The notes under the pieces are model-generated. The model made no database searches. It was given only the letters and a program-made list of their open reading frames with translations, and was not told where the DNA came from. Shown in pieces: positions 3,486-10,222 of a stretch of 15,415 nucleotides of DNA (positions within the stretch are counted from its first letter, which is position 1; every line of letters starts with the position of its first letter). Source of the DNA: Leidyana gryllorum EB-2025a (Eukaryota > Protista > Apicomplexa); contig JBLWGC010000187.1 in NCBI GenBank assembly GCA_048772705.1, forward strand, positions 1 through 15,415, given 5' to 3'. Made by a program: the position numbers and the translations under genes.

Positions 3486-3543
3486 GCCGTTGTATGGGCG
3501 CTTGGTCAGCCACTGAATGCGATAGCCCCTCATCTGTGCGTCT

Positions 3544-3616
3544 GGGCGGCTAGCTCAGATGGTAGAGCGCTCGCTTTGCATGCGAGAGGTACTGAGATCG
3601 ATACCCAGGTCGTCCA
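3544..3616 (+). tRNA. trnA: tRNA-Ala(TGC)
   Basis: G3:U70, ctcgc ttTGCat gcgag, eukaryotic Ala T-loop ATCGATA; one T-stem mismatch. Confidence 0.85.
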
Positions 3617-3693
3617 AACTCCATGCAACTTTGGCTGCAGAGAAACAGCTGGAGTGTTTCGTCCAGTGGCTGACCGAGTGCCGATACCATGGC

Positions 3694-3996: not shown

Positions 3997-4068
3997 TACA
4001 GCCACCGAGGATCGAATTCGGGACCTTCGCGTGTTAAGCAGACGTCGTAACCACTAGATGATGGCTGC
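3997..4068 (-). pseudogene. tRNA-Val(AAC) pseudogene
   Basis: rc ttAACac loop; 1-nt anticodon-stem deletion; A-box and B-box substitutions. Confidence 0.78.
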
Positions 4069-4132
4069 ATGGATGGTCCCCGCAGCCCAAGAGAAGTGGC
4101 GAAGCTTCAGGGAGTAGTGAGGACCAGTTCAA

Positions 4133-4202
4133 GGGTCGCGCCGGGATCGAACCCAGGTCGGAAAATGCAAAGTGTCGAGTGCTAACCACCAAGGACGCAA
4201 CC
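4133..4202 (-). pseudogene. tRNA-Gln(TTG) pseudogene (uninterrupted paralog of the split Gln at 9323-10038)
   Basis: rc GGTTGCG..GGTTAGCACT..ctTTGca..GGGTTCGATCC..CGCGACC. Confidence 0.75.
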
Positions 4203-4359
4203 GGTTCAGCCCATCCCAGAAGAGTCGGACTAGCGCTTCCTCAACTAGACACATGCAACACGGGTCTTGTATACAGACCCCAGCGTAAAGAGTTGGATTC
4301 GAGTCGGGCAAAAACCTCAGTTCAATCATTCAACCAGTTGCGCTCTACCCGAATGCTAC

Positions 4360-4548: not shown

Positions 4549-4630
4549 GGCAACTTGCCCGAGTGGTTAAGGGGGTAGACTCGAAATCTACTGGGCCTGG
4601 CCCGCGCTGGTTCAAATCCAGCAGTTGTCG
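4549..4630 (+). tRNA. trnS: tRNA-Ser(CGA)
   Basis: GGCAACT/AGTTGTC, gtaga ctCGAaa tctac, long variable arm, G73. Confidence 0.93.
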
Positions 4631-6645: not shown

Positions 6646-6700
6646 GCCATTGTATCGGAATTCGGTCAGCCACTGGATGCAATTCCCATGTTGAACGCAT

Positions 6701-6773
6701 GGGCGGCTAGCTCAGATGGTGGAGCGATCGCTTTGCATGCGAGAGGTACGGGGATCGATACCCAGGTCGTCCA
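6701..6773 (+). tRNA. trnA: tRNA-Ala(TGC), stem mismatches
   Basis: Paralog of 3544-3616; G3:U70, ttTGCat. Confidence 0.78.
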
Positions 6774-6850
6774 AACTCCGTACGGCGGGATCTGCTGGTA
6801 TTTGAATACAGAGTTCCGATCTCTAAGAGAGAGGCGAATGCCGCAGATAC

Positions 6851-7850: not shown

Positions 7851-7921
7851 GCATCTATGGTCTAGTGGTAGAATGTCTCGTTGCCATCGAGACGACCCGG
7901 GTTCGATTCCCGGAAGATGCA
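7851..7921 (+). tRNA. trnG: tRNA-Gly(GCC), 7:66 mismatch
   Basis: ttGCCat, intact A/B boxes; T5 shortly downstream. Confidence 0.85.
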
Positions 7922-7997
7922 GAAGACACATGGTTGTTTTTCCACCATTCCAGAAATTCATGCGTGAGTTGGTGTTTAACCCCCCAACCACATCGCA

Positions 7998-8080
7998 CGA
8001 CAACTGCTGGATTTGAACCAAAGCGGGCCAGGCCCAGTAGATTTCTAGTCTATCCCCCTTAACCACTCGGGCAAGTTGCC
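7998..8080 (-). tRNA. trnS: tRNA-Ser(AGA), 1-nt insertion variant
   Basis: rc ctAGAaa on the same body as Ser(CGA) 4549-4630; T-stem substitutions. Confidence 0.75.
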
Positions 8081-8177
8081 ACCTGTCGGACTTAGTAACA
8101 GATTCCATCCGTATTCCTCGTAGAATGTTGGGGCTTCCTCGGGTCGAGGGCAACTCTGTATCATAGATCCATTCCCT

Positions 8178-8555: not shown

Positions 8556-8663
8556 GACGACATCTCTTACTCGCTGGCACTTTTTCACAACGGTTTGGGG
8601 TCCTAGTCAAGCTCCCTGAACCGTATGTGAAGCCACTGGTCGCAAAATGCCAAGTTCGACAGC

Positions 8664-8745
8664 GGCAACTTGCCCGAGTGGTTAAGGGGGTAGACTAGAA
8701 ATCTACTGGGCGTGGCCCGCGCTGGTTCAAATCCAGCAGTTGTCG
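8664..8745 (+). tRNA. trnS: tRNA-Ser(AGA)
   Basis: gtaga ctAGAaa tctac; intact. Confidence 0.93.
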
Positions 8746-8809
8746 TGCGATGTGGTGGAAATGATGCAATTCCCAGCATCAAAAACTCATATGGGTCGAG
8801 ACAGGGAAT

Positions 8810-8881
8810 GCCTCCTTAGCTTAGGGGCAGAGCATTTGCTTTGTAAGCGAAAGGTCGCTGGTTCGATTCCGGCAGGAGGCT
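8810..8881 (+). tRNA. trnT: tRNA-Thr(TGT)
   Basis: GCCTCCT/AGGAGGC, tttgc ttTGTaa gcgaa, GGTTCGATTCC. Confidence 0.92.
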
Positions 8882-8922
8882 TCAGTCATTAGCCTAAACA
8901 TGGTTGCGATCCTCTGCCCGCA

Positions 8923-8963
8923 TTTCGGACGGCGGCTTGCACACAGCACTCGGCCATCTTGCC
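8923..8963 (-). pseudogene. tRNA-Leu 5' remnant (CAA-like loop)
   Basis: rc GGCAAGATGGCCGAGTG|CTGTGTGCAAGCCGCCGTCCG; internal deletion and truncation. Confidence 0.7.
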
Positions 8964-9057
8964 GGAGTGTTCTTGGCTCGCCGTTTCACCCATTTCCCGT
9001 CGGTGAAATCTCAAAATGCGAGGACTTCTGGGGTTGGAGGCCGGCGAGTTTACTAGC

Positions 9058-9129
9058 TCCGAGGTAGTATAGTGGTCAGTATTTCCGCCTGTCACGCGGC
9101 ATACCCTGGTTCGATTCCCGGTCTCGGAG
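9058..9129 (+). tRNA. trnD: tRNA-Asp(GTC), several substitutions
   Basis: ctGTCac, GGTTCGATTCC; anticodon and T-stem mismatches. Confidence 0.72.
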
Positions 9130-9184
9130 CACAGATGGCTTCGCTGAAGATTCTCTCCTTTGGTTCTCGCTGAACGTCGCGAGC

Positions 9185-9258
9185 TACAGCCACCGAGGAC
9201 CGAACTCGGGACCTTTTGGGTGTTGAGCAGACGTCGTAACCACTAAACCGTTGACTGC
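9185..9258 (-). pseudogene. tRNA-Val(AAC) pseudogene
   Basis: Val body; U33->C, anticodon stem broken. Confidence 0.75.
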
Positions 9259-9581
9259 ATGAATGGGCCCCGCAGCCCAAGAGGAGTGGCGAAGTTTTAC
9301 GGAGGAGTGAGGACCAGTTCCAAGGTCGCGCCGGAAATCGAACCCAGGTCGGGAGATTCAGAGTTGTTGTGCTCCAGGGTGAGTGCCGACTGTCGAGTTC
9401 GTTCCCCCTTTTTTCCTTTTCTAAAAAGCATCTAAGTTGGACCTAACGCTACCTATGTGCTACGGCTAAGGTCTTGCCTCAAATGTCTTGGCGCGCGCGT
9501 GTACAGCCTTCACCTGCACACGTATGGACAAGACTTACCTTAAGCAGCCAGTCCCGTTGACAATGCCGTGAGAGTCAGGCT

Positions 9582-9654
9582 TGTCCGCGGGGAGACTCGA
9601 ACCACCGACCTTCAGAACATAAGTCCCTAGTCATTACCATTGTGCTATTGGCGC
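9582..9654 (-). promoter_or_regulatory. tRNA-like Pol III type-2 promoter unit A inside the insertion
   Basis: rc A box TAGCACAATGG, B box GGTTCGAGTC at tRNA spacing; stems unpaired. Confidence 0.65.
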
Positions 9655-9797
9655 AGTCGCCGAACATGACGTGGCACTGCAGACCAGTGTGCAGCTTAGA
9701 CGTGCGTGTACGAAGCTGTGGGGCCTTCTGGGGGCTCCCCCACCCGTCCTCCATCCTCGACCTGCCCTCACCCGTCACCTGGGGGTCTTGGCACAGT

Positions 9798-9869
9798 TGT
9801 CCGAGGTGGGATTCGATCCGCCGACCTGCGGGTCCCAAGTCCGAGTAGTTACCACTGCACTACTGGATC
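9798..9869 (-). promoter_or_regulatory. tRNA-like Pol III type-2 promoter unit B inside the insertion
   Basis: rc TAGTGCAGTGG..AGGTCGGCGGATCGAATCC; ends CGGACAA like unit A. Confidence 0.65.
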
Positions 9870-9921
9870 ACAATACTAAGGGCAGCCATGTGCCGGTCGA
9901 GGTGGCTAGCCAAGGGCGGAG

Positions 9922-9994
9922 TGCAGGGCCGTGGATTCGATCCTGCGACCTCCAGGTTGCGAGCACAAGACACTTCCCATTGCACTAACTGATA
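9922..9994 (-). promoter_or_regulatory. tRNA-like Pol III type-2 promoter unit C inside the insertion
   Basis: rc TAGTGCAATGG..AGGTCGCAGGATCGAATCC; begins ~10 bp inside the element end. Confidence 0.62.
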
Positions 9995-10222
9995 CACCAC
10001 AACAAGAGTCTCCAGTGCTAACCACTCACCACGCAACCGCTTCAGCCCATCCCGGAAGAGTCGTAGAACTATCCGGACTAGCCCTTTCTCAAATGAACAC
10101 ACGCAACACGAGTCCCTCTACTGACCGCTGAAATAATTAACTGGCTCCTGTATATAGCGCCCAGCGTAGAGCGTTCTATTTGAGTCGGACAATCATTGAA
10201 GCACGCTCTCCGCGAATGCTAC

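What the first reader, a model, noticed from the sequence alone, without database searches (positions are those of the whole stretch)
9365..10004. Solo-LTR-like element carrying three tRNA-derived Pol III promoter units
Seen: a 640-bp insertion bounded by TGTTGTG/CACAACA with a 5-bp AGAGT duplication. It holds three co-oriented, ~73-nt tRNA-shaped units on the minus strand (9582-9654, 9798-9869, 9922-9994). Each keeps an A box (TAGYRCARTGG), AGGTC and a B box (GGWTCGARTC) at tRNA spacing but has lost stem pairing. They resemble each other and match none of the tRNA bodies in the surrounding cluster, so they arrived with the element. Known: TG...CA ends with a 5-bp TSD typify LTR retrotransposons, and Cassandra TRIMs carry 5S-derived Pol III promoters in their LTRs. 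Inference: this is a retroelement family whose LTR uses multiplied tRNA-type promoters or TFIIIC-binding sites for expression, insulation or tRNA-cluster mimicry.
Basis: partly seen in the sequence, partly recalled or inferred. Interest (0 to 1): 0.9.

Follow-up and report, generated by a model that had tools for sequence, protein, structure and literature searches.

The report
Retrotransposon LTR carrying three tRNA-gene-like modules
The 640-bp insert is a leftover terminal repeat (solo LTR) of a complete gypsy-type retrotransposon. Its repeat carries three decayed tRNA-gene copies that keep their internal promoter boxes and vary unusually little between copies, which is new for a self-sufficient element but related to the known 'Helenus' mini-elements.

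Summary
Window 9365-10004 is a precise 640-bp insertion (TGTTGTG...CACAACA, 5-bp duplication AGAGT) that splits a tRNA-Gln(CTG) gene. An uninterrupted paralogous site lies at window 4031-4266.

The genome holds 14 full copies at 97-100% identity, at about 9 distinct sites. Eight of these sites have their own 5-bp duplication.

Two copies flank a 6.24-kb element on contig C43. It has a primer-binding site matching tRNA-Ala(TGC), a short purine-rich tract (PPT-like), gag, and pol in the order PR-RT-RH-INT-chromodomain. The insert is therefore a solo LTR of an autonomous chromovirus, not a miniature non-autonomous element (TRIM).

The three tRNA-like units are real. They lie on the element's sense strand and match a sequence profile of the host's tRNAs from A box to B box (E 3e-6 to 7e-5). 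They fail structure-based tRNA tests and do not fold.

Among copies, the units vary about five times less than the rest of the LTR (p = 2e-4). This suggests selection acting on the DNA sequence.

Any role in Pol III or TFIIIC binding is inferred, not shown. Pol III cannot make the genomic RNA.

The closest known elements are Helenus TRIMs (Kojima 2024), which have one tRNA-like unit and are non-autonomous. First readers of this scan flagged the same LTR on four other pieces of this genome.

Three family insertions duplicate tRNA positions 31-35.

The parts
9365..10004 (-). Solo LTR, 640 bp, termini TGTTGTG...CACAACA. The element's sense strand is the window's minus strand.
   Evidence: Orientation comes from the full-length copy G000:C43:173686-179925.
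9360..9364 (.). Target-site duplication AGAGT, left copy
10005..10009 (.). Target-site duplication AGAGT, right copy
9922..9994 (-). tRNA-like unit tL1 (LTR sense 11-83). A box at 9977-9987 (TAGTGCAATGG), B box at 9933-9943 (GGATCGAATCC).
   Evidence: nhmmer E 2.1e-5; pattern matches; 12 of 21 stem pairs
9798..9869 (-). tRNA-like unit tL2 (LTR sense 136-207). A box at 9852-9862 (TAGTGCAGTGG), B box at 9809-9819 (GGATCGAATCC). No variable site among the 14 copies.
   Evidence: nhmmer E 7.5e-5
9582..9654 (-). tRNA-like unit tL3 (LTR sense 351-423). A box at 9637-9647 (TAGCACAATGG), B box at 9593-9603 (GGTTCGAGTCT).
   Evidence: nhmmer E 3.3e-6
9423..9427 (-). The only run of four or more T on the LTR sense strand (T5, LTR sense 578-582). 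It would be the first canonical Pol III stop downstream of all three units.
9323..9364 (-). 3' part of the interrupted tRNA-Gln(CTG) gene
   Evidence: ARAGORN on the reconstructed empty site
10005..10038 (-). 5' part of the interrupted tRNA-Gln(CTG) gene. The duplication covers tRNA positions 31-35.
4031..4266 (+). Uninterrupted paralog of the insertion site (81% identical, continuous across the insertion point)

Best explanation
SHOWN: window 9365-10004 is a solo LTR of an autonomous Ty3/gypsy chromovirus. The one full-length copy is 6.24 kb. It has a primer-binding site complementary to the 3' end of tRNA-Ala(TGC), a short purine-rich tract (PPT-like) before the 3' LTR, and open gag and pol frames. 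Pol runs PR-RT-RH-INT and ends in a chromodomain that keeps its three aromatic cage residues. This copy landed in the anticodon loop of a tRNA-Gln gene inside a giant tRNA array. The first two thirds of the LTR, on the element's sense strand, hold three degenerate tRNA-gene-derived modules. Each keeps an A box, the AGGTC variable loop and a B box at tRNA spacing, but none can form a cloverleaf. INFERRED: the modules are kept by selection on their DNA sequence, not on an RNA fold. They most likely work as type-2 Pol III promoter-like sites that bind TFIIIC, with or without Pol III. The element's chromodomain integrase probably sends it into H3K9-methylated repeat DNA, which here would be tRNA arrays and transposon nests. 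In that setting, TFIIIC-bound modules at both LTRs would act as heterochromatin barriers or open-chromatin seeds, keeping the Pol II-driven element expressible. Any Pol III transcripts would be short LTR RNAs ending at the single T5 run. The genomic RNA must be made by Pol II.
For: Solo LTR and family: 14 copies, distinct flanks, eight different 5-bp duplications; an empty-site paralog. Full-length element: LTR pair 97.0% identical flanking gag and pol; Pfam RVT_1, RT_RNaseH, rve, Integrase_H2C2, Chromo and aspartic protease; the primer-binding site matches 16 nt plus CCA of tRNA-Ala(TGC); the chromodomain cage Y/W/Y is present. Modules. Not tRNAs and not folded RNA. Selection: 4 variant events in 218 nt of units against 39 in 422 nt elsewhere (Fisher p = 1.8e-4); singletons 3 of 29 (p = 0.0036); CpG density is similar in both. 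Against the 82% relic, identity is 84% in boxes, 78% in the rest of the units and 73% elsewhere. Pol II is needed because the internal region has T6 at 1054 and T4 runs. Habitat: 5 of 9 sites lie in tRNA arrays and 4 in transposon nests. tDNA and TFIIIC sites acting as heterochromatin barriers, and cage-bearing chromodomains reading H3K9me, are established knowledge recalled from yeast and fungal work, not tested here.
Against: There is no binding or expression data; no sequencing run was listed. The modules are absent from the sister family (56% RT identity) and from roughly 50%-identical metagenomic relatives that share the tRNA-Ala primer-binding site. They are therefore recent and dispensable for this clade. 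The 82% relic has mutated boxes in tL1 and tL2. The low-variation zone covers whole units and the tL1-tL2 spacer, not only the boxes, so some other U3 function could explain it. The copies are few and partly duplicated by segmental duplication. Most array tRNA genes lack T-run terminators, so Pol III signals in this host are uncertain.
Confidence: 0.45

Rival explanations
1. Neutral passenger. A piece of tRNA array, or old tRNA-derived SINE heads, was captured into U3 of this lineage and is decaying. The boxes look good only because they are the most stereotyped part of any tRNA, and the low variation is chance or reflects another U3 function.
For: The units have three different 'anticodons' (CGC, TGG, TAT) and spacers of 52 and 143 nt, like a stretch of array. 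Relatives lack them. The relic copy has decayed boxes. Stems retain 10-12 of 21 pairs.
Against: Variation in the units is depleted about 5.4-fold, singletons included, with equal CpG density. All six boxes are near consensus, with one box change among 14 copies. No matching array segment or SINE exists elsewhere in the genome.
Confidence: 0.3
2. Homing device. TFIIIC bound to the modules on the cDNA or LTR tethers the pre-integration complex to TFIIIC-rich tRNA arrays. This would explain the array bias and the fixed insertion point inside tRNA genes.
For: Five of 9 sites lie in tRNA arrays. Three independent insertions (Gln, Pro, degenerate Tyr) all duplicate tRNA positions 31-35, midway between the A and B boxes, in both orientations. 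My rough estimate of the chance of this is about 1e-4.
Against: The sister family lacks the modules yet also sits beside tRNA arrays. Four of 8 duplications begin with AC, so a plain sequence or DNA-shape preference of the integrase for the conserved C32-T33 loop could give the same result. Arrays may simply tolerate insertions.
Confidence: 0.12
3. Pol III-driven mobile unit like Helenus or Cassandra (TRIMp3). The LTR family would be transcribed by Pol III from the modules and retrotransposed as a short non-autonomous element.
For: A tRNA-like sequence in an LTR defines Helenus (PMC10886601). The sense strand of the LTR has no T4 run until T5 at 578-582.
Against: No short LTR-PBS-PPT-LTR copy exists. 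Every unpaired copy is a solo LTR with its own duplication, and the only pair encloses 4.96 kb of gag-pol. The T5 precedes the primer-binding site, so a Pol III RNA would lack it. The internal T6 blocks Pol III.
Confidence: 0.05
4. Not an LTR: a DNA transposon with terminal inverted repeats, or three later SINE insertions into an older repeat.
For: The 7-bp termini are inverted repeats of each other.
Against: The termini are only 7 bp, of TG...CA type. Copies flank gag-pol with a primer-binding site and a purine-rich tract. The units are present in all copies, have no duplications or tails of their own, and are found nowhere else.
Confidence: 0.01

Closest known systems
Helenus TRIMs (TRIMp3; Kojima 2024, PMC10886601)
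   Same: LTR retrotransposon LTRs contain a tRNA-derived sequence that keeps the A and B boxes but is usually not a functional tRNA. They make 5-bp duplications (fungal and plant families), solo LTRs are common, and a Pol III promoter role is inferred from conservation only.
   Different: Helenus is non-autonomous, 311-1263 bp long, with an internal part holding only a PBS and PPT. It is described as carrying a tRNA-like sequence in each LTR, not an array of three. Here the LTR belongs to a 6.2-kb autonomous chromovirus and carries three units. That paper argues that autonomous partners must use Pol II promoters and should not share such LTRs.
Cassandra TRIMs (5S rRNA-derived Pol III promoter in LTRs)
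   Same: A small-RNA-gene promoter is embedded in an LTR.
   Different: Cassandra is 5S-derived, plant-specific and non-autonomous. No 5S match was found here.
Chromoviruses (Ty3/gypsy with a chromodomain integrase, e.g. MAGGY, Tf1)
   Same: PR-RT-RH-INT-chromodomain pol, tRNA-complementary primer-binding site, TG...CA LTRs, 5-bp duplication, and accumulation in repeat-rich DNA.
   Different: To my knowledge, and in the literature searches made here, no chromovirus with an array of tDNA-like modules in its LTR has been described.
tRNA-gene-targeting retrotransposons (Ty1, Ty3, Dictyostelium TRE and DGLT-A) and Dada DNA transposons
   Same: They associate with Pol III genes. Dada families insert around the anticodon loop of specific tRNAs (PMC8869645).
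   Different: Ty and TRE elements insert upstream or downstream of tRNA genes, not inside them. Dada is a sequence-specific DNA transposon. Here an LTR element sits at positions 31-35 of three different tRNA isotypes.
tRNA-derived SINEs (SINE2)
   Same: A degenerate tRNA head that retains the A and B boxes.
   Different: These units have no LINE-type tail, no duplications of their own and no free copies. They exist only inside this LTR.

Membership tests
LTR retrotransposon, solo LTR | TG...CA termini with short inverted ends | tested here: met
   TGTTGTG...CACAACA in all 14 copies
LTR retrotransposon, solo LTR | Independent copies, each with its own 4-6 bp target-site duplication | tested here: met
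   Eight different 5-bp duplications at distinct flanks; an empty-site paralog
LTR retrotransposon, solo LTR | The same repeat occurs as a direct pair around an interior with PBS, PPT, gag and pol | tested here: met
   G000:C43:173686-179925. The LTRs are 97.0% identical, a PBS lies 2 nt after the 5' LTR, and a purine-rich tract precedes the 3' LTR. This pair lacks a matching duplication.
Ty3/gypsy chromovirus | Pol order PR-RT-RH-INT with a C-terminal chromodomain | tested here: met
   Pfam: protease 39-121, RVT_1 252-411, RT_RNaseH 500-602, Integrase_H2C2 690-748, rve 763-859, Chromo 1136-1189
Helenus / TRIMp3 | tRNA-derived sequence with A and B boxes inside the LTR | tested here: met
Helenus / TRIMp3 | Non-autonomous miniature element (short interior with only PBS and PPT, total about 0.3-1.3 kb) | tested here: not met
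   The only paired copy encloses 4.96 kb of gag-pol, and no miniature pair is among the 15 copies
Helenus / TRIMp3 | Transcription by RNA polymerase III | not testable with these tools
   No run was listed. The sequence rules out Pol III for the full element.
Cassandra | 5S rRNA-derived segment in the LTR | tested here: not met
   No 5S match in Rfam at E<=10
Functional tRNA gene | Cloverleaf with about 21 paired stem positions | tested here: not met
   ARAGORN and the Rfam tRNA model are negative; 10-12 of 21 pairs; folding z-scores >= 0.08
tRNA-derived SINE insertions | Free copies elsewhere with their own duplications and tails, and absence from some LTR copies | tested here: not met
   All 43 genome matches lie in copies of this LTR, and every full copy has the units
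DNA transposon with terminal inverted repeats | Long terminal inverted repeats, a transposase or MITE-like copies | tested here: not met
   Only 7-bp inverted termini, and only one unrelated 13-nt internal inverted repeat

The most novel reading that the evidence does not exclude
An autonomous chromovirus has domesticated an array of three tDNA mimics in each LTR as TFIIIC landing pads. The same TFIIIC link directs its integrase to a fixed point (positions 31-35, between the A and B boxes) inside tRNA genes of giant tRNA arrays. This would be a new mode of Pol III-coupled targeting combined with self-insulation.
Probability: 0.12. Interest if true: 0.85.

Novelty: new variant of a known kind. 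Interest (0 to 1): 0.6.

Why it matters
Small-RNA-gene promoters inside LTRs were known only from miniature, non-autonomous elements (Cassandra, Helenus, Ajax). The Helenus paper argues that their autonomous partners should not carry such LTRs.

Here a protein-coding chromovirus carries three tDNA-like modules per LTR, and they vary less than the rest of the LTR. If they bind TFIIIC, this would be a natural case of a retrotransposon carrying its own tDNA-type boundary elements.

It could also be a plausible ancestor state for Helenus-like elements. It gives a tractable system for asking how A/B-box modules act outside tRNA genes.

The repeated insertion at one position of the anticodon loop adds a possible new integration specificity.

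Tried and rejected
- **Structure-based tRNA tests on the units.** The Rfam tRNA covariance model gave no hit even at E<=10. ARAGORN found none. Single-strand folding gave no excess stability. The units are therefore not tRNAs or RNA mimics.
- **Pol III transcription of the whole element.** Rejected because of internal T6 and T4 runs; the T-run count is about as expected.
- **T-run terminators as a test of Pol III units.** Uninformative, because only 9 of 57 host array tRNA genes have T>=4 within 30 nt.
- **Expression data.** No sequencing run was listed.
- **Relatives elsewhere.** A module pattern scan of metagenome contigs gave 0 matches. A pol-based scan found only 26-36% relatives. Three contigs encoding 47-53% relatives have LTRs without tRNA-like units. 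The in-genome sister family also lacks them.
- **Origin from a particular tRNA.** Best identities are 64-68% and do not agree with the units' 'anticodons'.
- **Larger tandem duplication within the LTR.** Only the units themselves repeat.
- **First pattern scan.** It used a wrong gap range and found nothing; it was corrected.
- **Handling of the element's sequence.** A per-column majority was used inside one script only to count variants.

Full report
**1. The insertion is real**

Window 9365-10004 begins TGTTGTG, ends CACAACA and is flanked by AGAGT on both sides. Removing the 640 bp and one AGAGT restores a tRNA-Gln(CTG) gene on the minus strand (ARAGORN). A paralogous stretch at window 4031-4266 is 81% identical and runs uninterrupted across the insertion point. 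The window is one piece of a dense tRNA array, with 57 tRNA genes in 15.4 kb.

**2. It is a family of solo LTRs**

The window's own genome is 15.5 Mb in 237 contigs. It holds 14 full-length copies at 97-100% identity, one half copy and one 82% relic. Orienting the copies and reading their flanks gives about nine distinct sites. Eight of them have their own 5-bp duplication: AGAGT, ACTGT, TGGGC, ACCTT, CTCTG, GATTC, CAAAC and ACTGA. Four sites are each represented by two copies with identical flanks, which are duplicated or allelic contigs.

**3. The parent element**

Two copies on contig C43 (173686-174325 and 179287-179925) lack matching duplications and enclose 4.96 kb.
- The interior carries a 361-aa gag-like frame with no Pfam match.
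- It also carries an overlapping 1200-aa pol with aspartic protease, RVT_1, RT_RNaseH, Integrase_H2C2, rve and a C-terminal Chromo domain.
- Two nucleotides after the 5' LTR lies a primer-binding site complementary to the last 16 nt plus CCA of the array's tRNA-Ala(TGC).
- A short purine-rich tract precedes the 3' LTR.
- The chromodomain keeps its three aromatic cage residues.
- The two LTRs are 97.0% identical.

This is the only copy of this pol in the genome. The next family is 56% identical in RT-RH, and more than 100 other gypsy-type RT matches exist. The element is therefore an autonomous chromovirus, and the window copy is one of its solo LTRs.

Its coding strand shows that the LTR's sense strand is the window's minus strand. 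The three tRNA-like units are therefore in sense orientation, at LTR positions 11-83, 136-207 and 351-423.

**4. The units**

Evidence that they derive from tRNA genes:
- A sequence-only HMM of the window's class-I tRNAs hits exactly these three segments. Each alignment runs from the A box through AGGTC to the B box (E 3.3e-6, 2.1e-5 and 7.5e-5). The HMM hits nothing in the sister family's LTRs.
- The A boxes (TAGTGCAATGG, TAGTGCAGTGG, TAGCACAATGG) and B boxes (GGATCGAATCC twice, GGTTCGAGTCT) are near consensus.
- The motif AGGTCNNNGGWTCGARTC occurs only in these units in the window, with 0 expected by chance.
- The full A-to-B pattern has 43 matches in the genome, all in copies of this LTR, and 0 for the reversed control.

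Evidence that they are not tRNAs:
- ARAGORN and the Rfam tRNA model find nothing.
- Only 10-12 of 21 stem pairs survive.
- They fold no better than shuffled sequence.
- Their anticodon-like triplets (CGC, TGG, TAT) do not agree with their best-matching tRNA bodies, and identities are 64-68%.

**5. Are they maintained?**

Among the 14 copies I counted 43 variant events. Four fall in the 218 nt of the units and 39 in the other 422 nt (Fisher p = 1.8e-4). Singletons show the same bias, 3 of 29 (p = 0.0036). CpG density and GC content are alike inside and outside the units. tL2 has no variable site at all.

Against the 82% relic on C194, identity is 84% in the boxes, 78% in the rest of the units and 73% elsewhere. 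This is a weak trend, and that relic has mutated boxes in tL1 and tL2.

Because the RNA does not fold, the constraint most likely acts on the DNA. It covers whole units, not only the boxes, and the sample is small. I read this as moderate evidence of function.

**6. What Pol III could and could not do**

The LTR's sense strand has one T-run, T5 at 578-582. The interior has a T6 and three T4 runs. Pol III could make only LTR-length RNAs that end before the primer-binding site, so the genomic RNA needs Pol II.

Host array tRNA genes mostly lack T-run terminators, so terminator logic is unreliable in this host. No public run was listed, and expression is untested.

**7. Context**

Five of the nine sites lie in tRNA arrays and four in transposon nests.

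Three independent insertions sit inside tRNA or tRNA-like genes:
- Gln-CTG, in the window.
- Pro-TGG, on C71.
- A degenerate intron-bearing Tyr-GTA, on C66.

All three duplicate tRNA positions 31-35, in either orientation. This may reflect TFIIIC-linked targeting. It may instead reflect an integrase preference for the conserved loop sequence, since four of the eight duplications begin with AC.

The sister family shares the terminal motif TGTTGT...ACAACA and also sits beside tRNA arrays, yet has no tRNA-like units. Metagenomic relatives at about 50% identity share the tRNA-Ala primer-binding site, and their LTRs also lack the units. The modules are therefore a recent acquisition of this lineage.

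HSP70 from the genome is 75-77% identical to its best named matches, which are apicomplexans, chromerids and Perkinsus. The host is probably an alveolate protist.

**8. Comparison with what is known**

[quoted passage not shown] That paper proposes the class TRIMp3, together with Cassandra and Ajax. It argues that autonomous partners must use Pol II promoters and would not share such LTRs.

The present element meets the tRNA-like-LTR criterion but fails the miniature, non-autonomous criterion, and it has three units. I therefore call it a new variant of that kind, not a member.

Dada DNA transposons insert near anticodon loops in a sequence-specific way (PMC8869645). Known tRNA-targeting retrotransposons insert outside the gene (my own knowledge; titles).

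**9. Verdict**

The Cassandra-like framing is replaced by an autonomous chromovirus, with Helenus as the nearest precedent.

The functional reading rests on conservation and analogy only. That reading covers TFIIIC or Pol III sites serving insulation, expression or array homing. First readers of this scan flagged the same LTR on four other pieces of this genome, and separately flagged the anticodon-loop insertion.

Noticed in passing
window 9360-9364 and 10005-10009; L009 (G000:C71, site next to 32761); L005 and L008 (G000:C66, sites next to 24828 and 13159): Three independent insertions of this LTR family lie inside tRNA or tRNA-like genes (Gln-CTG, Pro-TGG, degenerate Tyr-GTA). Each duplicates tRNA positions 31-35, in either orientation. 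Possible anticodon-loop hotspot. Four of eight duplications start with AC, so a sequence preference is an alternative.
   Followed up: partly
window, all 57 tRNA genes: Only 9 of 57 array tRNA genes have a run of four or more T within 30 nt downstream, and 33 have none within 200 nt. Either Pol III termination signals are unusual in this host or many array genes are not independent transcription units.
   Followed up: no
L029:1988-2589 and 8685-9286; L030:1932-2532 and 8628-9229: A sister chromovirus family (56% RT-RH identity) has 602-bp LTRs with the same terminal motif TGTTGT...ACAACA. It also lies next to tRNA arrays but has no tRNA-like units.
   Followed up: partly
L027:1829-1847; window 3543-3617 and 6700-6774; L033, L034: The primer-binding site matches 16 nt plus CCA of tRNA-Ala(TGC). 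The same type of primer-binding site is found in metagenomic relatives at about 50% identity.
   Followed up: partly
L025:4396-4464 and 4562-4599, repeated at 7888-7956 and 8054-8091 (G000:C43 about 119.4 and 122.9 kb): Rearranged fragments of the LTR's first unit and spacer (94-97% identical, the two halves inverted relative to each other) sit in a 3.5-kb duplicated block next to tRNA-Gly(TCC).
   Followed up: no
window 9450-9462 (LTR sense about 543-555): A fourth A-box-like stretch (TAGCACATAGGTA on the sense strand) lies just upstream of the T5 run. It may be a remnant of a further unit and was not detected by the tRNA HMM.
   Followed up: no
window 9185-9258 (minus) and about 4100-4230: Degenerate tRNA-like sequences not called by ARAGORN. 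One scores 20 bits on the Rfam tRNA model. The other is a Gln-TTG-like paralog of the interrupted gene.
   Followed up: partly
G000:C104:1252909-1268878; G000:C2:201839-211179; G000:C230:1579055-1594793: Tandem arrays of HSP70-family genes, apparently intronless. The best named relatives of the cytosolic copy are alveolates, at 75-77% identity.
   Followed up: no
G000:C43:168000-188000 (L023, L026): The full-length element sits in a nest of other gypsy-type elements. One solo LTR of the family (182094-182731) interrupts the RT region of another element. The flanks of the full-length copy (GTTCC and GCTGT) do not match, which suggests recombination between copies.
   Followed up: partly
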